Virus record (IMG/VR): IMGVR_UViG_3300049460_000128
Location: 124,001-188,000 of that record
DNA: 64,000 nucleotides
Direction: 5' to 3' (one strand)
Positions 30,277 through 37,320 of the stretch are shown piece by piece. Position 1 is the stretch's first letter, and each line of letters begins with the position of its first letter. Position numbers and translations under genes: made by a program. The notes under the pieces were generated by a model, which searched no databases, had not been told where the DNA came from, and saw nothing but the letters and a program-made list of their open reading frames with translations.

Positions 30277-30624
30277 ATGGACACTAGATTGGAACAAGCA
30301 CTAGAATACGCAAACTACAAAGTCACGGTATTCCAACAAAAAGAAAACCTCAAATTGCGCCTCGACAACATGTTGACATACGCGCACAACGGTGGCATTT
30401 TCAAGATCTCAGATACTCTCATTTCATTCGTTGACTCATTGCTGCGTCGCGATGTCGTGGAAGTTGTTCTGATTGATCAACGTGGAAATCCCGTAAAGGT
30501 AGTTGATCTCAAGGCTTTCCAGGAAACCATCTTCAGTCTGTATTTTGAAGCAACGAATGAATACCAGACGGAATTTGATAAACTGCGCAAAGCACGCTCA
30601 GTCAAGCAGGTGACCGGCGTATGA
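30277..30624 (+). CDS. hypothetical protein
   Basis: AGGAG SD, 115 aa, ATGA overlap with the next gene; CATAAGTA late-promoter variant at 30243-30250. Confidence 0.8.
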   Translation: MDTRLEQALEYANYKVTVFQQKENLKLRLDNMLTYAHNGGIFKISDTLISFVDSLLRRDVVEVVLIDQRGNPVKVVDLKAFQETIFSLYFEATNEYQTEFDKLRKARSVKQVTGV

Positions 30625-31523
30625 GCAAAGGCTTTTTGATCTACGCGCACAACAATGAAGAAGTCGACTATGGTAAGTTGGCTCTTTGCTGTGCGCTAAT
30701 GATCAAACGCAACCTAACGGTCAATGCGACATGTCTGGTAACCGATCAAGGCACACTTGACTGGCTGCGTGCCAGTCATACCGCCGAATTGATCGAGTAT
30801 GCGTTCGATCACATCAAGGTTGTCGACTACGCGACATCCCATGGTGGCAGCAAACAAAAGAAATTCCTCGATACCAGTTCCACTAGCAAAATTCTGAGCT
30901 GGCACAATGGCTCCCGTAATACAGCCTACGAACTGACTCCATTCGACGAAACAATTATCCTCGATAGTGATGTACTGGTACAAGATAAATCGTTCGATCT
31001 GGTATGGGGGAATGATGAAGATCTGATGGTCAATAATCAAGCTATTACACTGGAACACCAGAGTCCACGGCATACTGAAGTGCGTCTCGATACAATGGGA
31101 ATTCCCATGTATTGGGCAACCATGGTATATTTCCAGAAGACACCAAGGTCGAAAATGCTCTTTGATTTGGTCTCTCATATCAAGGCACAATACGCATACT
31201 ATCAATACGTATATGAGTTCCCGGGAAAATTATATCGTAATGATTATGCGTTCTCGATTGCAATTCACATGATGAATGGCTTTTTGGAAAATAACGAAGT
31301 GAAGAATTTCCCATGTGGTAAGATCCTCAGTAGTTTCGATACCGATGAATTAATTGGCGTGAAAGAAAATGAACTCACGTTCTTGGTGCAAGATAGCCAA
31401 CAAGAATGGCGATTCTTTGTCAACAATGTTCGAGGCATTACCGTTCATGCTATGAACAAATACGCATTGCTCCGCCATGCACCTACCATAATTGACATTT
31501 ACTATGACTCAACAAAGATTTAA
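30621..31523 (+). CDS. GT-A fold glycosyltransferase-like protein
   Basis: AYELTPFDETIILDSDVLV (DxD after a beta strand), YWATMVYF, RNDYAFSIA. Confidence 0.65.
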   Translation: MSKGFLIYAHNNEEVDYGKLALCCALMIKRNLTVNATCLVTDQGTLDWLRASHTAELIEYAFDHIKVVDYATSHGGSKQKKFLDTSSTSKILSWHNGSRNTAYELTPFDETIILDSDVLVQDKSFDLVWGNDEDLMVNNQAITLEHQSPRHTEVRLDTMGIPMYWATMVYFQKTPRSKMLFDLVSHIKAQYAYYQYVYEFPGKLYRNDYAFSIAIHMMNGFLENNEVKNFPCGKILSSFDTDELIGVKENELTFLVQDSQQEWRFFVNNVRGITVHAMNKYALLRHAPTIIDIYYDSTKI

Positions 31524-32373
31524 ACGTGATCGTGGTTTTTTCACCTTTGCACAAAATGGCACAACGGATTATATTCGTCTAGCCTATGCACTGGCATTGA
31601 GTCTTAAGGCTACTCAAGTGGAAGTTCCCTATTTGTCAATTGGTGTGACGCCAGGTACCGTGGTTGACGCCAAATACGCATGGGCGTTTGATGAGATAGT
31701 GGAAATTCCATGGGGTGATGCAGCAAAGGATGCTGACTGGAAACTCCAGAATGAATGGAAAGCATATCACATGACTCCCTACAGGGAAACAATTAAGCTC
31801 GACTGTGATATGCTGTTCACGACCAATGTTGATTCATGGTGGGAAACACTCAGTCAGCAAGATGTTTGGTTCGCAACCACCGCAACCACATATCGCAATG
31901 ATGTTGTGACCTCTGATTACTATCGTAAGACATTCACGGCAAATAAATTGCCAAATGTCTATACGGCATTCTGCTATTTCAAGCATTCAGATACCGCCTA
32001 CCAGTTATTTGATATGGCTGAAATCATTTATACCAACTGGGAGAAATTCACGTTTGAATTCATGGACGAACCTCGCCCCACTGAAGTAAGTACTGACGTG
32101 GTATTTGCACTCGCGGTCAAGCTTCTGGGTATAGAAGATGAATGTACGCGCCCTGGAACCTTCCCAAGCTTCACACACATGAAGACTCAATTGCAGGGTT
32201 GGAATGTGAATCAAGTTACTGAACACTGGACTGATCATATCGGCGTATATTTCACTGACGAATTGGAATTGAAAATTGGTCGCTACCTGCAATTGGCGCC
32301 AATCCATTATCATGTCAAGAGCTTCATTACCGACGAGATGATTTCCTTGTATGAGAAGAAGGTGATGCCTTGA
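31504..32373 (+). CDS. GT-A fold glycosyltransferase-like protein, paralogue of 30621
   Basis: AYHMTPYRETIKLDCDMLF, VYTAFCYF and STDVVFALA align with 30621. Confidence 0.65.
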   Translation: MTQQRFKRDRGFFTFAQNGTTDYIRLAYALALSLKATQVEVPYLSIGVTPGTVVDAKYAWAFDEIVEIPWGDAAKDADWKLQNEWKAYHMTPYRETIKLDCDMLFTTNVDSWWETLSQQDVWFATTATTYRNDVVTSDYYRKTFTANKLPNVYTAFCYFKHSDTAYQLFDMAEIIYTNWEKFTFEFMDEPRPTEVSTDVVFALAVKLLGIEDECTRPGTFPSFTHMKTQLQGWNVNQVTEHWTDHIGVYFTDELELKIGRYLQLAPIHYHVKSFITDEMISLYEKKVMP

Positions 32374-33293
32374 AAACGTTTTTGTATTATGACCAGTCAA
32401 CTGGTGTCATCAAGGCAATTTCGCCCGTACAATCAAGCGAATTTGACAAATGGGCATTGACTAAACTTGATATCCCGACAGCAAATAAGTTCCTGATGGG
32501 TGAATGGGATACGAATCATTGGTTCGTCAGCAGCAATACGACTGAAGACAAATGCGTGCTCTCCATGAATCAATTCGACTATTTGCCACAGACCTCCACT
32601 ACCATTGAAGTCTTGCCACGTTCAGAACACTCGCAGCATATCAAAACTGCAATCGGCGTAACGATCTACACCAAATTGCAGAAATTTGAATTGTCAGTTG
32701 CGCCTGAAGCCGCAAAGCTGGATCTCAGCAAGATAGAAGATGATACAATGGAATTCTTCATTACCAAGCGTAATGATCCATCCCATATTTTGGGTATGAT
32801 TACCACCAATGCCAAGGAATTGTTTGAGAAGGGTACGCTCATCTTCGACTTCCCCGTTGAAGGAAATGACTTCTCGGTATCCACCAAGCGACTGTTCCGT
32901 TTCTATCAGTTGACTGTACGTCGAAACAAGGTGTCCAATCGGGTCAAGCATTCGCATCATCGCTACAATACCTTGGTGCCATATACTCGCATTAAGACCA
33001 TGCAGGATGGCAAGGATGGTATCATCGTTGTCCACAATGTAAATAAAGATCAATTGGAAATCTCGCTTGATGGCGAAGTGTATGATATAACGACTGATGC
33101 CAGTTCTGAGATCGCTACGTTATTCTTGACACGAGAACGTGATCCCACTATATTGATTGACATCGTAAAGTTAGACCTTCGGGATATCGATTACAACAAG
33201 ACAGTAGTGATCCCAGTACCACATGATGCTGGTGTGGACTTTGGTATCTCGGGATTTCCTTACGTGGACAAACTTTCATTCTTGAGAAAATAA
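32370..33293 (+). CDS. hypothetical protein with internal domain duplication
   Basis: TTG start overlapping the previous stop; repeated FFITKRNDPSHIL / LFLTRERDPTILI. Confidence 0.75.
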   Translation: MKTFLYYDQSTGVIKAISPVQSSEFDKWALTKLDIPTANKFLMGEWDTNHWFVSSNTTEDKCVLSMNQFDYLPQTSTTIEVLPRSEHSQHIKTAIGVTIYTKLQKFELSVAPEAAKLDLSKIEDDTMEFFITKRNDPSHILGMITTNAKELFEKGTLIFDFPVEGNDFSVSTKRLFRFYQLTVRRNKVSNRVKHSHHRYNTLVPYTRIKTMQDGKDGIIVVHNVNKDQLEISLDGEVYDITTDASSEIATLFLTRERDPTILIDIVKLDLRDIDYNKTVVIPVPHDAGVDFGISGFPYVDKLSFLRK

Positions 33294-33322
33294 TGGCTTT
33301 ACAGAAATTTCCTATCACATGA
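33293..33322 (+). pseudogene. 9-codon remnant (MALQKFPIT*) duplicating the N-terminus of gene 34065
   Basis: ATGGCTTTACAGAAATTTCCTATCACATGA versus ATGGCATTAGAGAAATTCCCCATTACG at 34065. Confidence 0.8.
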
Positions 33323-34065
33323 ATTATATAAAGCATTACGATATCTTGATAGCCCGTGCGATAGCCAGAAAGCTTTCTGGCTATTATGAAGTTCATCATA
33401 TAATTCCAAGGTGTATGGGTGGCACAAACAATGCTAATAATTTGGTCGAATTGACTCCAGCTGAACATTTTATAGCTCATTTATTACTCTGTCGCATATA
33501 TCCAAGTGTTGACGGGTTAGTGACCGCCGCATTTTTGATGTCTCACAAGGGAAAATATACAAACAAAGTATATGGTAAATTACGTGAACAATATGCTCAA
33601 ATTCGTAGTCATAATATGATTGGTGAACGTAATCATATGTATGGCAAAACACATGATATTGCAGCTCGAAATAAAGTATCACAAGCTAACACGGGGCGAA
33701 TACGATCAAGTTCGCATAGACAAGCCATAGCCAATGCACAGACTGGTAAAGTCATGAGTGCTTCAACCCGCAAATTGATAAGTGATGCTAATGTTGGTCG
33801 CATAGTGACTGATACAACAAAAGATAAATTATCCAAAGCATTGCAGGGTAAAATACGAAACCCTGATTCAATAGCAAAGCAAAGTATAACAAATACTGGT
33901 TCTGGTAATCCCAATTTTGGAAATGGCCAAGCCGTAACAGGAGCAAAGAACGGAATGTATGGTAAAAAATGGTATGTGAATGCAAAAGGTGAGCGTCGTG
34001 TGATGTTTCCCAATGACGAACGTTTACAACAAGATGACTGGCAAAATGGCAAGGAGTGGAAATAA
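33319..34065 (+). mobile_element. free-standing HNH homing endonuclease with NUMOD3-like repeats
   Basis: EVHHIIPRCMGGTNNANNLVELTPAEHFIAHLLL, then NHMYGKTH...KVSQANTG-type repeats; visibly more AT-rich than its neighbours. Confidence 0.9.
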
Positions 34066-34967
34066 TGGCATTAGAGAAATTCCCCATTACGACGTTTGAT
34101 GTTTTTTTCCTTAGCTACGATGAACCAAATGCAGAGAAGCATTGGGCTGACCTCCTGGACAAATGCCCTTGGGCTAAACGTGTACATGGCGTAAAGGGCT
34201 TTGATGCAGCACACCGCGAATGTGCCAATCAATCTGAAACCCCATGGTTCGTTACGGTCGATGCTGACAATATCGTGTTACCAGAATTCTTTGATATCGT
34301 GGTTGAACTTGATCCCGAGAATGCACCAAACCGCTGCTATTCCTGGAACGCAATCAATATGATGAACGGACTCATCTACGGCAATGGTGGCTTGAAATTG
34401 TGGTCGAAACAATTCGCTGCCAATATGCGTTCACATGAACTGTCGGATGATAAAGACGCGGTTGACTTCTGTTGGGAATCTGATTACAAGCAAGTTCATC
34501 GTACCTTCTCGGAAGTACACAACAATGGGTCAGCGTATCAGGCATTCCGGGTTGGCTATCGCGAAGGCATCAAACTCGCGTTAGATCGAGGCCAGCGCGT
34601 CGCACCAGAATTAATGAAGACGGTGTTGCATAACGTCAATCTTCGCAACCTACGCATATGGTCGTCAGTTGGTGCTGACGTTGAGCATGGTCTGTGGGCC
34701 ATATACGGCACTCGTATGGCATGGAGCCAAATGTGTGATCCAGATTACGACTTCACGGTCATTCGTGATTACGACTGGTTCAATGCCTTCTGGGAACAAA
34801 TCATTGGTGACTTGCCACCCGATCCCGTTGATCGTTTGAATGGATTGCCATTCTTCATCAATGTGTTGGGTGAGGATATTAAGAATAAAACGAAAATTGC
34901 TGTACCATTGCTTGATAGTGATACTAGCGAATTTTTCCGTGATACCTTCAAACTACGAAATGACTGA
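34065..34967 (+). CDS. GT-A (family 2-like) glycosyltransferase-like protein
   Basis: FDVFFLSYDEPNA, RVHGVKGFDAAH, FVTVDADN (DxD), NGLIYGNGGLKLW. Confidence 0.65.
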   Translation: MALEKFPITTFDVFFLSYDEPNAEKHWADLLDKCPWAKRVHGVKGFDAAHRECANQSETPWFVTVDADNIVLPEFFDIVVELDPENAPNRCYSWNAINMMNGLIYGNGGLKLWSKQFAANMRSHELSDDKDAVDFCWESDYKQVHRTFSEVHNNGSAYQAFRVGYREGIKLALDRGQRVAPELMKTVLHNVNLRNLRIWSSVGADVEHGLWAIYGTRMAWSQMCDPDYDFTVIRDYDWFNAFWEQIIGDLPPDPVDRLNGLPFFINVLGEDIKNKTKIAVPLLDSDTSEFFRDTFKLRND

Positions 34968-35283
34968 TTTCCAGGAAGCCAACCAGGTAATGATCCGGTT
35001 GGCTTCCTGCACTGTAGCACTCCGCCACGACTCAATACATGACTTCTTCGAGTCTGTATTCCTCCAAGCCTCACTCAACAAACAGTGGCGGGCTCCCTCG
35101 TATGCAAATGAAGGCCCAAAGGCAGATACCGATTATATCTTGGTATTCTTGCGTGACCTTCTGGCACTTCAATTCCCTGAACCACAAGACCCCAATCTCA
35201 TACAGATGCTGGCCGATGCCAGACTGTTGTATGAATGGGTCAGACCACAATACGAAGAAATTTTCGAGGTGCCATATGAATAA
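34960..35283 (+). CDS. small hypothetical protein, paralogue 1 (FPEPQDPNLIQM)
   Basis: Start MTDFQEAN overlaps the previous gene; shares a motif with the next two ORFs. Confidence 0.7.
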   Translation: MTDFQEANQVMIRLASCTVALRHDSIHDFFESVFLQASLNKQWRAPSYANEGPKADTDYILVFLRDLLALQFPEPQDPNLIQMLADARLLYEWVRPQYEEIFEVPYE

Positions 35284-35653
35284 TTTGTCCTCCACTTGCT
35301 ACCCTATTCGCCACAAGTCGATCGTGCCACTTCCCAATTACGCCATTGAATCGTTTGATGATGCAAACCAAGCCTATATCAAACTGATGGATCTTAAAGC
35401 AACTCTGTTGCTTGGGGCCAATAATCAATTGGTGCGTTTGGCTGTCCAGCAGGTGGTGATTAATGGCATGGTTGGTCACACGTTGGTGAAATGGCAATCT
35501 GCAATCATGGCACACATTCATGCAATAAAGGATCTTATGAATGCCCACTATCCAAATGACAACGATCCTGTGCTTATCGCCATGTTGGAATCTGCAAAGA
35601 TTTCGCATGATGAGATGACACAACTCTATAACGAGCATTGTCATGCTGACTGA
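35276..35653 (+). CDS. small hypothetical protein, paralogue 2 (YPNDNDPVLIAM)
   Basis: GAGGT SD before ATG 35276; shared motif. Confidence 0.7.
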   Translation: MNNLSSTCYPIRHKSIVPLPNYAIESFDDANQAYIKLMDLKATLLLGANNQLVRLAVQQVVINGMVGHTLVKWQSAIMAHIHAIKDLMNAHYPNDNDPVLIAMLESAKISHDEMTQLYNEHCHAD

Positions 35654-35879
35654 TGCCAATTTGATCTATGCGCGTCTGTGTGGAATTAAAGTCAATACTG
35701 CGGGTGGTGTTACCTTGATTGCACGTCATACCTTTATAGACCAAACTCACCAAGCATATATAGAGTATTTGGATACAATCGTGGATGGCGTATGGCCTGA
35801 ACCTGAAGATCCAGAACTACAAGATATGATTCGACGTGCAAATATACGTAAATCAATCTTACACGCATTCAACAAATAA
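35643..35879 (+). CDS. small hypothetical protein, paralogue 3 (WPEPEDPELQDM)
   Basis: Overlapping start; shared motif. Confidence 0.7.
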   Translation: MLTDANLIYARLCGIKVNTAGGVTLIARHTFIDQTHQAYIEYLDTIVDGVWPEPEDPELQDMIRRANIRKSILHAFNK

Positions 35880-35886
35880 GGAACAC

Positions 35887-37320
35887 ATGAGCGACACACC
35901 AAAATCAACAAATCAACTCAACATGGAAGCCATGATGGCCCGCATGGATGACGTAAAGGCTAAGAGCGGATCATCCACCATGTGTACTGCAAAATGGTTG
36001 CAAAGCACTGTCCATTTGAGTAATGGTCACACGCACTCATGTCACCACCCTTCTATTCACAAAATTCCAATCAGTGAAATTAAACGCAATCCGGCAGCAC
36101 TGCACAATACCGAGTTCAAGATCGAACAACGTAAAAAGATGCTGGCTGGCGAGCGTCCTGCTGAATGCCAATACTGCTGGAACATTGAAGACCTGCCAGG
36201 TAATCACATCAGTGATCGCACCTACAAGAGTGCTGACCTGGGCTGGTCGTATCCAAATTTGCAAGACGTGATCGAAAGCAAGGGTGGCGAGAATATCAAT
36301 CCGTCATACCTGGAAGTCTCCTTCGATTCAACGTGTAACATGAAATGCATGTATTGCACGCCTGACGTATCCAGCAAATGGATGGAAGAAAGTAAGCAGT
36401 ACGGGCATTATCCCAATACTTCCCATTATGTGGGTGGCATTGAATGGCTCAAGCAGCAGAACAAAATGCCAATTCCGCAAAGGGAAGACAATCCATACGT
36501 GGATGCGTTCTGGGAATGGTGGCCTGATCTGTACAAGAGTCTGCATACCTTCCGCATTACGGGCGGTGAACCCCTGTTGAGCAAAAATACCTGGCGTGTG
36601 TTGGAAGAGATCAAGAACAATCCACGTTCAGACTTGACTCTTGCTATCAATATCAACATGATGGCTCCTGATGATTTAATCGATCGTTTTATTCAGTATT
36701 ACAACGACATTGCACCTAACATCAAAGAGTTCCAGGTGTACACGAGTTGTGAAGCACATGGCAAACAAGCTGACTATATTCGCACAGGACTTGACTACGA
36801 TAAATTCATGGCAAATTGCCGTAAGTTCCTGTCCAGTACTGGTGCATGGTCTCGTTTGAATTTCATGATCACATTCAACGTATTGAGCCTCAGCACCTTC
36901 AAGGAATTCCTGACTGATATCTGGACTATGCGTACCGAATTCAATGAGTCGGATGCAATCAATCGTGTGCCTATGATGATCAACTATTTGCGCTGGCCGC
37001 AATTCCAAGATGTACGAGTAGCACCAGCGGAATACAAGGAAAAATACCTGAAGGTCATTAAAGATTACGTGGAAGCACACACGCGCAATACAAGCCCGAA
37101 TAAAGCCGGTAGGTTCTATTTGGAAGAAGTAGATCAGATCAATCGTTTGGGTGAGTATATGTTCGAACCCATGGAAGCTGGACACTTGAAAATTCAACAT
37201 AAAGACTTTGGTGCCTTCTATCCAGAATTCGATCGTCGTCGTAATGTGAATTTTGCTGAAACCTTCCCGGATCTGGTGGACTTCTTGAATCAATGTATCG
37301 AGGTAAACAATGAGCAGTAA
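35887..37320 (+). CDS. radical SAM enzyme with N-terminal twitch/SPASM-like domain (1 of 5)
   Basis: CNMKCMYC, ITGGEPLL; N-terminal CTAKW...HSCHHP...ECQYCW; TAAGGA SD. Confidence 0.9.
   Translation: MSDTPKSTNQLNMEAMMARMDDVKAKSGSSTMCTAKWLQSTVHLSNGHTHSCHHPSIHKIPISEIKRNPAALHNTEFKIEQRKKMLAGERPAECQYCWNIEDLPGNHISDRTYKSADLGWSYPNLQDVIESKGGENINPSYLEVSFDSTCNMKCMYCTPDVSSKWMEESKQYGHYPNTSHYVGGIEWLKQQNKMPIPQREDNPYVDAFWEWWPDLYKSLHTFRITGGEPLLSKNTWRVLEEIKNNPRSDLTLAININMMAPDDLIDRFIQYYNDIAPNIKEFQVYTSCEAHGKQADYIRTGLDYDKFMANCRKFLSSTGAWSRLNFMITFNVLSLSTFKEFLTDIWTMRTEFNESDAINRVPMMINYLRWPQFQDVRVAPAEYKEKYLKVIKDYVEAHTRNTSPNKAGRFYLEEVDQINRLGEYMFEPMEAGHLKIQHKDFGAFYPEFDRRRNVNFAETFPDLVDFLNQCIEVNNEQ

What the first reader, a model, noticed from the sequence alone, without database searches (positions are those of the whole stretch)
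33291..34094. Homing endonuclease inserted with a recoded replacement 5' end, leaving a 9-codon coupling minigene
Seen: upstream of the HNH is ATG GCT TTA CAG AAA TTT CCT ATC ACA TGA (MALQKFPIT*). Downstream, the glycosyltransferase starts ATG GCA TTA GAG AAA TTC CCC ATT ACG (MALEKFPIT). Both are preceded by AAATA. The differences are five synonymous third positions and one Q/E change. The chain stop/start TAATG (33291), minigene, ATGA (33319), HNH, TAATG (34063) keeps translational coupling unbroken. Inference: the endonuclease landed about 9 codons inside the gene and supplied its own diverged copy of the N-terminus. That would be an intron-free way to invade a coding sequence without killing it, and would probably make the new allele cleavage-resistant. 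It also suggests the glycosyltransferase is under selection.
Basis: partly seen in the sequence, partly recalled or inferred. Interest (0 to 1): 0.7.

Follow-up and report, generated by a model that had tools for sequence, protein, structure and literature searches.

The report
Homing endonuclease replacing a gene's start
A selfish endonuclease gene has inserted nine codons into a jumbo-phage sugar-transferase gene and brought a replacement start for that gene. The old start survives as a nine-codon stub, which mirrors a trick known from fungal mitochondria but which I did not find described for phages.

Summary
A 9-codon ORF (33293-33322, MALQKFPIT*) lies between the upstream gene (stop 33291-33293) and a 248-aa HNH/NUMOD3 endonuclease gene (33319-34065). 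The next gene (34065-34967, GT-A glycosyltransferase fold) starts MALEKFPIT. The chain TAATG / ATGA / TAATG is exact.

At least nine HNH-free relatives whose junctions were read have one copy, with the upstream gene running straight into the transferase gene. Three other metagenomic assemblies carry the orthologous HNH at the same site, each with its own stub.

- **The HNH moves horizontally.** Its synonymous divergence is lower than that of the flanking genes. It occurs in two backbone clades, each with an empty sister.
- **The stubs are resident sequence.** They differ almost only at synonymous sites, like working resident gene starts.
- **The downstream copy was exchanged with the HNH 3' part.** In two near-identical genomes the HNH DNA-binding part, that copy and about 17 transferase codons were swapped together.

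No intron signature was found. Cleavage resistance of the "recoded" copy and actual translational coupling remain untested.

This is a new variant of a known kind. The closest analogues are the fungal mitochondrial endonuclease ORFs that bring a foreign gene end, and the T4 MobA element.

The parts
32370..33293 (+). Upstream gene 'up1' (307 aa, no family assigned). Its TAA at 33291-33293 overlaps the stub ATG.
   Evidence: ORF list. Homologues sit directly upstream of the transferase gene in relatives. No Pfam or PHROG hit.
33288..33318 (+). Direct-repeat copy 1. It holds AAATA, the ATG and the first 8-9 codons of the resident transferase gene, that is, its displaced native start.
   Evidence: Top repeat family, 26/31 identical to copy 2. 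From -23 to +12 around the ATG it is identical to the empty allele L067.
33293..33322 (+). Nine-codon stub minigene (MALQKFPIT, stop). Its ATG overlaps the up1 stop (TAATG) and its TGA overlaps the HNH ATG (ATGA).
   Evidence: Sequence. The stub is kept as an open frame with both overlaps in L068, L070 (9 codons) and L069 (10 codons).
33319..34065 (+). Free-standing HNH + NUMOD3 homing endonuclease gene (248 aa), MobE-like.
   Evidence: Pfam NUMOD3 39.9 bits against a cut-off of 20.4; Pfam HNH is below its cut-off. PHROG 655 'homing endonuclease' E 9.6e-53. 36-44% identity to annotated T4-like-phage homing endonucleases, one annotated MobE. H26 H27 N41 H50 H54 are nearly invariant. dN/dS is 0.09-0.31 among four orthologues.
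34051..34056 (+). AAGGAG inside the last HNH codons, 8 nt before the transferase ATG. Probably a new Shine-Dalgarno sequence supplied by the element.
   Evidence: Sequence. Conserved in L068 and L070; AAGGAA in L069. Empty alleles have only GAGAAA there. The function is inferred.
34060..34090 (+). Direct-repeat copy 2. It holds AAATA, the ATG and the first 9 codons now used by the transferase gene; this is the imported start.
   Evidence: Near-identical to the copy in L070 (2 synonymous differences), although the backbones are about 80% identical. It was exchanged together with the HNH 3' part between L068 and L070.
34065..34967 (+). Conserved 300-aa gene with a GT-A glycosyltransferase-like fold and an invariant D66-x-D68. 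It is the invaded gene and is intact.
   Evidence: More than 7,500 homologues. AF2 model with pLDDT 93. The top Foldseek PDB hits are mostly GT-A glycosyltransferases (WrtF, SunS/ThuS, PBCV-1 A64R, TarP), with some sugar-nucleotidyltransferases, at E from 7e-5 and TM 0.3-0.4. Invariant columns are listed.

Best explanation
A free-standing, MobE-like HNH homing endonuclease gene sits inside the first codons of a conserved glycosyltransferase-like gene of an uncultured jumbo phage.

**The mobile unit.** It is the HNH ORF plus its own start for the host gene: a Shine-Dalgarno sequence written into the last HNH codons, the ATG, and the nine variable leader codons. In one documented exchange the unit also carried sequence up to about codon 17.

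**How it spreads.** It enters an empty allele by break or nick repair that copies a donor genome. The recipient's own ribosome-binding site, ATG and first 8-9 codons stay behind upstream. They form a stub, closed by the TGA that overlaps the HNH start codon.

**Consequence for the host gene.** The enzyme is still made as one polypeptide, so no intron, intein or gene split is needed. The insertion point lies exactly at the border between the poorly conserved leader and the conserved core, (I/L)(T/S)-x-FD.

**Likely expression (inferred, not shown).** Ribosomes that would have started the transferase now translate the stub. They stop at ATGA and some restart on the HNH, which has no Shine-Dalgarno sequence of its own. 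This would give low endonuclease output, as proposed for T4 mobE. The transferase would be translated from the element-borne AAGGAG plus ATG, also coupled to the HNH stop (TAATG).

**Target (by analogy).** T4 MobE nicks the 5' region of the downstream gene. The target here is therefore probably in the 5' part of the transferase gene.
For: **Empty sites**
- L067, L071, L072/L073, L074 and L075, plus the more distant L004-L007 and L023, keep the synteny up3-up2-up1-transferase. The gene start occurs once, and the stop and start overlap or abut.
- A scan of 55 related loci found no upstream copy above background (13-19/27).

**Occupied sites**
- L068, L069 and L070 carry the orthologous 248-aa HNH (73, 59 and 60% aa identity) at the same place.
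- Their stubs read MALQQFPII*, MALQKFPITT* and MALQQFPIT*. TAATG and ATGA are kept in all three.

**The HNH is functional and mobile**
- dN/dS is 0.09-0.31.
- Between the window and L068, pS is 0.44 for the HNH, with blocks at 0.14 and 0.31. The flanking genes give 0.66-0.80.
- On the transferase backbone tree the HNH occurs in two clades, each with an empty sister: (L067 empty,(window,(L068,L070))) at 99/96, and (L069, L071 empty) at 95/89.
- Only 4 of about 75 fetched loci have it.

**The stub is resident**
- Stubs differ almost only synonymously. Window against L069 gives 8 synonymous and 0 non-synonymous differences. Window against L070 gives pS 0.71 and pN 0.055, values like the backbone.
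- The L069 stub and the last 66 nt of its up1 are closest to the empty allele L071 (2 synonymous differences; 82.5%). The working start of L069 is foreign, MTIKKYHIT.

**The new start travels with the HNH**
- L068 and L070 have near-identical backbones (up1 99-100%, transferase from about nt 280 at 95-99.5%).
- They differ strongly from HNH nt ~147 through the downstream copy to transferase nt ~50. Their stubs differ by 1 nt.

**No intron.**

**Literature**
- MobE nicks the 5' end of the downstream gene nrdB, and flanking sequence is co-converted (PMC2790892).
- The mobE start overlaps the nrdA stop as UAAUGA, which the authors read as coupling (PMC2988022).
Against: - No enzymology is available. 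Neither the cleavage site nor any activity is shown.
- No RNA or ribosome data exist. The only run that holds the phage is DNA and is kept as contigs.
- The samples are small: four occupied alleles, two of them on contigs of 1.3 and 2.3 kb, and stubs of only 24 informative nucleotides.
- Window, L068 and L070 form one clade, so a single gain there followed by recombination is also possible.
- The 10-codon stub of L069 shows that the left junction is not always the same. Pure homologous homing does not predict that.
- No substitution that could confer cleavage resistance was found.
Confidence: 0.72

Rival explanations
1. There was one ancient insertion that made a target-site duplication of about 31 bp. 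Descent was vertical from then on. The stub is conserved because selection keeps it as a translated leader that delivers ribosomes to the HNH start. Empty relatives either never had the element or lost it precisely by recombination between the two repeat copies.
For: - The stub frame and both overlaps (TAATG, ATGA) are kept in all four occupied alleles. This includes an in-frame 3-nt length change in L069.
- Window, L068 and L070 are one clade.
- HNH identity along the gene is broadly in the range of the flanks in a 100-nt scan.
- Two direct repeats, 84% identical, would allow precise loss.
Against: - HNH synonymous divergence is clearly below that of all four flanking genes: 0.44, with blocks at 0.14-0.31, against 0.66-0.80.
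- The L068/L070 swap shows exchange.
- L069 sits in a different backbone clade beside an empty sister. Its stub matches that sister, while its working start does not.
- Selection for coupling needs an open frame, not a conserved peptide. Yet the stub peptides are as conserved as real N-termini of empty alleles.
Confidence: 0.15
2. The polarity is the reverse. The mobile unit is stub + HNH, which lands exactly between up1 and the transferase gene. The downstream copy is the resident start, and the stub is a relic carried from an earlier host.
For: With a duplication the insertion point is formally ambiguous. The repeat also covers AAATA before the ATG, and weaker matches extend to -12.
Against: - A carried, non-functional stub should decay at all codon positions. 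Instead the stubs differ almost only synonymously and have backbone-like pS.
- The window's left flank plus stub is identical to the empty allele L067 from -23 to +12.
- The L069 stub matches its empty sister L071.
- In L068/L070 the stub stayed with the backbone while the downstream copy changed.
Confidence: 0.07
3. The HNH lies in a self-splicing intron or a translational bypass element that joins the stub to the rest of the transferase. The stub would then be the true exon 1.
For: The stub ends exactly where the conserved core begins. HNH/NUMOD3 enzymes are often intron-encoded.
Against: - No Rfam family matches at E<=10 on either strand of 32900-34500.
- No stable or covarying structure is predicted at the stub/HNH junction (z-score 0.29; consensus -2.2 kcal/mol; no compensatory pairs).
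- The downstream copy is a complete start with its own AAGGAG and ATG. Splicing would remove a perfectly good duplicate.
- L069's downstream start has diverged while still encoding a full leader.
Confidence: 0.03
4. The repeat is a chance similarity or an assembly chimera of HNH-plus and HNH-minus strains.
For: The window comes from a metagenome assembly. Only one run holds it, and it is kept as contigs.
Against: Shuffle and genome-wide controls. The same layout appears in three other independent assemblies from other samples. An independent Logan contig is identical across the region.
Confidence: 0.01

Closest known systems
Fungal mitochondrial mobile endonuclease ORFs (mORFs) that bring a foreign gene terminus: Allomyces macrogynus atp6; Glomus sp. 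atp6, atp9, cox2, nad3 (PMC3630166)
   Same: An endonuclease ORF enters a protein-coding gene without an intron. It brings a diverged, in-phase copy of the gene's end, which replaces the native one. The native end remains next to the element as a relic. The native relic matches close relatives, and in atp6 all its DNA differences from the close relative are synonymous; the imported copy is foreign.
   Different: - Those cases replace the 3' end (C-terminus), use LAGLIDADG or GIY-YIG enzymes, and leave the relic downstream.
- Here the 5' end is replaced, in a phage, by an HNH/NUMOD3 enzyme.
- Here the relic lies upstream as a complete mini-ORF, overlapping the stop of the gene before it and the start of the endonuclease.
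T4-type MobA element in the topoisomerase large-subunit gene (genes 39/60) (bioRxiv 10.1101/2022.08.31.505936)
   Same: An HNH Mob-family endonuclease inserts inside an ORF. It carries an element-encoded region homologous to the host gene (HomR) that replaces host sequence. Insertions appear independently in several clades that have near-identical empty relatives. The element's own sequence protects against self-cleavage.
   Different: - MobA splits the protein into two polypeptides with added tails, deletes 55-75 nt, and needs a 50-nt ribosomal bypass.
- Here nothing is deleted and the protein stays whole.
- Here only the variable leader is exchanged, and no bypass or protective insert is seen.
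T4 mobE between nrdA and nrdB (PMC2790892; PMC2988022)
   Same: Same enzyme type: the window's HNH is 36-44% identical to annotated T4-like-phage homing endonucleases, one annotated MobE. It is free-standing and lies directly upstream of the probable target gene. Its start codon overlaps an upstream stop. MobE nicks the 5' region of the downstream gene, and flanking sequence is co-converted.
   Different: mobE lies between genes and duplicates nothing. Here the insertion point is inside the coding sequence, and a short stub ORF, not a full gene, precedes the endonuclease start.
mobE in Aeromonas phage Aeh1 nrdA, the 'genes-in-pieces' case (cited in PMC10448857)
   Same: A Mob-type HNH gene sits inside a coding sequence without an intron or intein, and the host function is retained.
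   Different: Aeh1 nrdA is cut into two functional polypeptides. Here the upstream piece is a 9-residue relic with no expected role in the enzyme.

Membership tests
Free-standing HNH homing endonuclease (Mob / I-HmuI-like, HNH + NUMOD3) | HNH (beta-beta-alpha-metal) catalytic motif | tested here: met
   PHROG 655 'homing endonuclease' E 9.6e-53. H26, H27, N41, H50 and H54 are nearly invariant across orthologues and T4-type homologues. Pfam PF01844 alone is below its cut-off, 17.2 against 21.4 bits.
Free-standing HNH homing endonuclease (Mob / I-HmuI-like, HNH + NUMOD3) | NUMOD3-type DNA-binding repeats after the nuclease domain | tested here: met
   Pfam PF07460, 39.9 bits against a cut-off of 20.4, E 4e-10.
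Free-standing HNH homing endonuclease (Mob / I-HmuI-like, HNH + NUMOD3) | Sporadic presence or absence at one and the same site in related genomes | tested here: met
   Four occupied loci against at least nine inspected empty junctions, out of about 75 loci in all. Occupied alleles fall in two backbone clades, each with an empty sister.
Free-standing HNH homing endonuclease (Mob / I-HmuI-like, HNH + NUMOD3) | Horizontal spread with co-conversion of flanking sequence | tested here: met
   HNH pS is 0.44 against 0.66-0.80 in the flanks. In L068/L070 the replaced tract runs from HNH nt ~147 to transferase nt ~50.
Free-standing HNH homing endonuclease (Mob / I-HmuI-like, HNH + NUMOD3) | Site-specific nicking or cleavage of the empty allele, and resistance of the occupied one | not testable with these tools
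   This needs enzyme assays. No fixed difference between occupied and empty starts was found.
Free-standing HNH homing endonuclease (Mob / I-HmuI-like, HNH + NUMOD3) | Not embedded in an intron or intein | tested here: met
   No Rfam hit. No structure at the stub/HNH junction. The ORF has its own start and stop.
mORF-type gene-end replacement (Allomyces/Glomus mitochondria) | Endonuclease ORF + imported in-phase copy of the gene terminus + displaced native terminus kept beside it | tested here: met
   All three elements are present. The native status of the stub and the foreign status of the working start are supported. It is a mirror image, 5' rather than 3'.
mORF-type gene-end replacement (Allomyces/Glomus mitochondria) | Mitochondrial host; LAGLIDADG or GIY-YIG enzyme; C-terminal replacement | tested here: not met
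   Phage genome, HNH enzyme, N-terminal replacement. It therefore works like this class but is not a member.
MobA / gene-60 element | Splits the host protein in two with added tails, and needs a 50-nt bypass | tested here: not met
   The transferase ORF is whole (300 aa, aligned end to end with homologues). No coding gap is present.
Group I or II intron-encoded endonuclease | Ribozyme core flanking the ORF | tested here: not met
   cmscan of 32900-34500 at E<=10 gave only two noise hits, a snoRNA and Alpha_RBS at 12-15 bits.
GT-A fold glycosyltransferase (the invaded gene) | Rossmann-like GT-A fold with a DxD motif | tested here: met
   AF2 pLDDT 93.2, pTM 0.90. The top 18 Foldseek PDB hits are all GT-A glycosyltransferases, at E 7e-5 to 1e-3 but modest TM 0.3-0.4. 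D66 and D68 are invariant in 44 homologues. There is no Pfam or PHROG hit. The profile search of PDB sequences gave only a weak GmaR hit, E 0.08.
GT-A fold glycosyltransferase (the invaded gene) | Sugar-transfer activity and its acceptor | not testable with these tools
   No biochemical data exist.

The most novel reading that the evidence does not exclude
The stub may not be a mere relic. It may be a working part of a two-way expression adaptor that lets a homing endonuclease live inside a coding sequence.

- The stub would capture the host gene's native initiation signals. It would pass a small, controlled share of ribosomes to the SD-less endonuclease through the ATGA overlap.
- The element would pay the host back with a new Shine-Dalgarno sequence and a new start.
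- In addition, the endonuclease's DNA-binding half and the adjacent imported gene start (to about codon 17) would be exchanged as one unit. They would form a matched pair of specificity and immunity. Variants would displace one another in co-infections, as I-HmuI and I-HmuII do in SPO1 and SP82 (recalled from memory, not read here).
Probability: 0.3. Interest if true: 0.7.

Novelty: new variant of a known kind. Interest (0 to 1): 0.56.

Why it matters
Homing endonucleases are thought to need an intron, an intein or an intergenic site to avoid killing their host gene. The known exceptions split the protein (Aeh1 nrdA, T4 genes 39/60) or replace a 3' end (fungal mitochondria).

This locus shows a third route, in a phage: replacing the 5' end at the border between a variable leader and the conserved core. 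Comparative evidence indicates that the layout is maintained and spreads between lineages.

- **Annotation.** Tiny ORFs that repeat the next-but-one gene's start can mark such insertions. The first codons of the invaded gene may have a history different from the rest of the gene.
- **Experiments.** It is a compact natural system for studying translational re-initiation chains.
- **Evolution.** The endonuclease's DNA-binding module and the adjoining target-gene segment are exchanged together here. That bears on how phage nuclease genes mark the boundaries of genetic exchange.

Tried and rejected
- **Public phage records.** Megablast of the locus found nothing. tblastn with the transferase found only Ralstonia phage RsoM2USA at 46% identity, where all neighbours are 'hypothetical'.
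- **up1 as a query.** Searching IMG/VR with it found no relatives.
- **IMG/VR and JGI metagenome contigs.** Relatives reach only 71% identity or less, and all are empty. The informative relatives came from the protein database and contig look-ups.
- **HNH-minus variant in the source sample.** The single run is kept as contigs. One contig spans the region, and no alternative joint is seen. Contigs cannot show rare variants.
- **Intron and RNA structure.** Nothing was found.
- **Recoding for resistance, three checks.**
  - The unusual residues after the insertion point (VM in L068 and L069, CF in L070) lie at positions that vary across the whole family.
  - No nucleotide separates all occupied from all empty alleles in the copy itself.
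  - Codons 6-19 are not a general divergence hotspot. They stand out only in pairs explained by the swapped tract.

  I therefore dropped the idea that the data show resistance-driven recoding. It remains untested.
- **Promoters and terminators.** Hits are at background level (25 against 18 +/- 4; 7 against 6 +/- 2.5) and were not used.
- **L027.** A same-distance (777 nt) weak repeat turned out to lie inside an ordinary up1 homologue and is a coincidence.
- **First scripts.** The first pairwise-identity script timed out. The first genome-wide stub scan used too strict a threshold and found nothing. Both were rerun.
Full report
**1. What is in the sequence**

The window is bases 124001-188000 of a 296.6-kb IMG/VR virus record. 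CheckV rates it 70% complete, and it is evidently a jumbo phage. The only public phage with a clear homologue of the invaded gene is the 344-kb Ralstonia phage RsoM2USA.

The reading below is taken directly from the sequence:
- The upstream ORF 'up1' (32370-33293) ends in TAA at 33291-33293.
- The last A of that stop is the first base of an ATG, giving TAATG. That ATG opens a 30-nt ORF, 33293-33322, which encodes MALQKFPIT and a stop.
- The TGA of this ORF shares its first two bases, TG, with the ATG at 33319, giving ATGA. That ATG opens a 248-aa ORF, 33319-34065.
- The TAA of that ORF overlaps the ATG at 34065, again TAATG. That ATG opens a 300-aa ORF, 34065-34967, which starts MALEKFPIT.

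The two copies form the best direct repeat of the region: 33288-33318 against 34060-34090, 26 of 31 identical, including AAATA before each ATG. In codons 2-9 they differ by five synonymous changes and one Q/E change.

Three controls argue against chance or artefact:
- No shuffle of the region reaches 26/31.
- In the whole 296.6-kb genome this is the only gene with an upstream ATG-led copy of its own first 27 nt at 20/27 or better.
- An independent Logan contig is identical over 31500-36500.

**2. What the genes are**

*The 248-aa protein.* It is an HNH + NUMOD3 homing endonuclease.
- Pfam NUMOD3 is above its cut-off; Pfam HNH is below its cut-off.
- PHROG 655 'homing endonuclease' scores E 1e-52.
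- It is 36-44% identical to annotated T4-like-phage homing endonucleases, one annotated MobE.
- The catalytic His/Asn positions are nearly invariant.

*The 300-aa protein.* It has no Pfam or PHROG family, but more than 7,500 homologues. A confident AF2 model (pLDDT 93) has glycosyltransferases of the GT-A fold as its best PDB matches: WrtF, SunS/ThuS, PBCV-1 A64R and TarP. E-values start at 7e-5, and TM-scores are a modest 0.3-0.4. D66-x-D68 is invariant. 'Glycosyltransferase' is therefore a reasonable label for the fold. The activity is untested.

*The neighbourhood.* The gene sits in a conserved, translationally overlapping row, up3-up2-up1-transferase-radical SAM.

**3. Empty and occupied alleles**

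The order up3-up2-up1-transferase is kept in distant relatives (63-71% identity). They have no HNH and only one gene start. Closer relatives came from the protein database and contig look-ups.

| Locus | State | Source call(s) | Transferase start (or stub) |
|---|---|---|---|
| L067 (82% id) | empty | 20, 34 | MALQQFPIT |
| L071 | empty | 30, 34 | MALQKFPIT |
| L072 / L073 | empty | 31, 34 | MALQTFSIT |
| L074 | empty | 32, 34 | MAKQPRSIT |
| L075 | empty | 33, 34 | MAKVSTPIT |
| L068 (104-kb ENA contig) | occupied | 21, 28, 34 | stub MALQQFPII* |
| L070 (Logan, 2.3 kb) | occupied | 26, 28, 34 | stub MALQQFPIT* |
| L069 (ENA, 1.3 kb) | occupied | 25, 28, 34 | stub MALQKFPITT* (10 codons) |

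In the empty alleles up1 runs straight into the transferase gene. The three occupied alleles carry the orthologous 248-aa HNH (73, 60 and 59% aa identity for L068, L070 and L069) at the same place. TAATG and ATGA are kept in all three.

A scan of 55 related loci found no upstream copy above background (13-19 of 27).

The leader of the transferase (3-12 residues) is highly variable across the family, and the core (I/L)(T/S)-x-FD-x-x-F-L-S-Y-D-E-P-N follows it. The element sits exactly at that border.

**4. The element is alive and moves**
- Among the four orthologues, dN/dS is 0.09-0.31.
- Between the window and L068, synonymous divergence of the HNH is 0.44. Codons 161-215 give 0.14 and codons 1-47 give 0.31. 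The flanking genes give 0.80 (up3), 0.70 (up2), 0.72 (up1) and 0.66 (transferase). At least parts of the HNH are therefore younger than the split of the two backbones.
- I built a tree of the transferase without its first 17 residues. The window groups with L068/L070, with the empty L067 as sister (99/96). L069 groups with the empty L071 (95/89). The HNH thus occurs in two backbone clades, each beside an empty allele.

**5. Which copy is resident and which is imported**

*(a) The stubs evolve like working coding sequence.*
- Window against L069: 8 synonymous and 0 non-synonymous differences.
- Window against L070: pS 0.71 and pN 0.055, the same as backbone genes.
- A relic carried along with the element would decay at all codon positions.

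*(b) The stubs match their own backbones.*
- The window's left flank plus stub is identical to the empty sister L067 from -23 to +12.
- The L069 stub differs from the real start of its empty sister L071 by two synonymous bases, and the adjoining up1 end is the closest match (82.5%).
- The working start of L069 is foreign, MTIKKYHIT.

*(c) L068 and L070 show a swap.*
- They are near-identical genomes: up1 99-100%, and the transferase from about nt 280 at 95-99.5%.
- They differ strongly (50-80% identity) from HNH nt ~147 through the downstream copy to transferase nt ~50.
- Their stubs differ by one base.
- The DNA-binding half of the HNH, the working start and about 17 codons were therefore exchanged as one tract, and the stub stayed with the backbone.

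*(d) The E at residue 4.*
- E is shared by the working starts of the window and L070.
- All stubs have Q there, and so do the closely related empty alleles with a MALQ-type start.

**6. Likely mechanism**

*Shown.* The layout, its conservation, the mobility of the HNH, the stub's resident character and the linked exchange of the downstream copy.

*Inferred.*
- The layout probably arose once, through an imprecise insertion that duplicated about 31 bp across the up1/transferase junction.
- It then spreads by homing. A nick or break in the 5' part of an empty transferase gene is repaired from an occupied genome.
- The recipient's own first codons pair with the donor's stub and are kept. The HNH, the new start and a short downstream tract are copied in.
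- This picture follows T4 MobE, which nicks the 5' region of the downstream gene nrdB and co-converts its flanks (PMC2790892).

*Expression, also inferred.*
- The HNH has no Shine-Dalgarno sequence, and its ATG overlaps the stub stop.
- The stub uses the transferase's native initiation region, GAGAAAATA-ATG.
- The transferase now has AAGGAG 8 nt before its ATG, written in the last HNH codons (K-E-W-K). This is conserved in the occupied alleles and absent from empty ones.
- T4 mobE has the same kind of overlap with nrdA, UAAUGA, which is read as coupling that keeps endonuclease levels low (PMC2988022).

**7. What is not supported**

I found no evidence that the differences in the imported copy give cleavage resistance:
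- No position separates occupied from empty alleles within the copy.
- The odd residues just after it lie at positions that vary family-wide.
- Codons 6-19 are not a general hotspot.

What does differ consistently is the context. The imported copy has HNH sequence in place of the up1 end upstream of -5. The stub has HNH sequence in place of transferase codons 10 onward. Either change could break a target that spans the junction.

A second possible reason for divergence between the two copies is avoidance of precise deletion by repeat recombination. Both ideas need experiments.

**8. Comparison with known systems**
- *Fungal mitochondrial mORFs.* This is the closest functional analogue. In Allomyces atp6 and Glomus atp6, atp9, cox2 and nad3, an endonuclease ORF brings a foreign in-phase C-terminus and leaves the native one as a relic. 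The native relic matches close relatives, and in atp6 its DNA differences from them are all synonymous (PMC3630166). The present case is the mirror image at the 5' end, in a phage, with an HNH enzyme.
- *T4-type MobA element.* This is the closest phage analogue. It is a Mob-family HNH gene inside the topoisomerase ORF, and it carries a region homologous to the host gene that replaces deleted sequence. It has inserted independently in several clades. However, it splits the protein and needs the gene-60 bypass (bioRxiv 10.1101/2022.08.31.505936).
- *Aeh1 nrdA/mobE.* This also splits the protein (cited).

Five full-text searches did not find a phage case of 5'-end replacement with a stub minigene. 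The library is limited, so this is not proof of absence.

**9. Verdict**

Resistance and coupling are untested. This is a new variant of a known kind and is of moderate interest.

Noticed in passing
window 34981-35879: Between the transferase gene and the radical-SAM gene lie three small tandem ORFs, roughly 34981-35283, 35339-35653 and 35643-35879. They share a P-E/N-P-x-D-P-x-L-x-x-M motif, but the pairwise similarity is weak (E 7e-4 and 0.9). This interval is absent in L004, L006, L007 and L023, and it holds four small ORFs in L067 and two in L068. Small variable ORFs next to radical-SAM enzymes and a glycosyltransferase-like gene might be modified-peptide precursors. I did not test this.
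   Followed up: partly
L068 4255-5050 against L070 354-1150: Two otherwise near-identical genomes differ by a replaced tract. It starts just after the HNH catalytic motif (about aa 50), runs through the whole DNA-binding part, and ends about 17 codons into the transferase gene. The nuclease domain itself is 92-97% identical. This looks like a swap of a specificity module together with its adjoining target-gene segment.
   Followed up: yes
L069 69-101: The stub here has 10 codons (…ATT ACC ACA TGA) instead of 9. The left junction is shifted by one codon and is still in frame. The HNH stop and the transferase start do not overlap here (TAAAATG).
   Followed up: partly
G000:C1:77454-77900 (outside the window; L002 1282-1947, minus strand): The genome holds a second, 221-aa HNH/NUMOD3-type paralogue (37% and 30% identity in two searches). 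It lies 75 nt downstream of a 138-aa ORF. I did not check its flanks for a stub; the genome-wide stub scan found none.
   Followed up: partly
window 30621-32373: up3 (30621-31523) and up2 (31492-32373) are distant paralogues of each other (21-27% cross-matches in relatives). Several relatives carry a second, diverged copy of the transferase-like gene and two or three radical-SAM paralogues downstream. The whole block is conserved from RsoM2USA to the metagenomic contigs fetched here, and its function is unknown.
   Followed up: no
JGI metagenome 3300045701, a 1466-bp contig (no DNA available): A fifth HNH orthologue (P0125, 58% identity) is called as only 175 aa. It starts at the equivalent of M74, so it lacks the nuclease domain, and it overlaps a downstream transferase homologue. 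It may be a decaying copy or a gene-calling effect. This could not be checked.
   Followed up: partly
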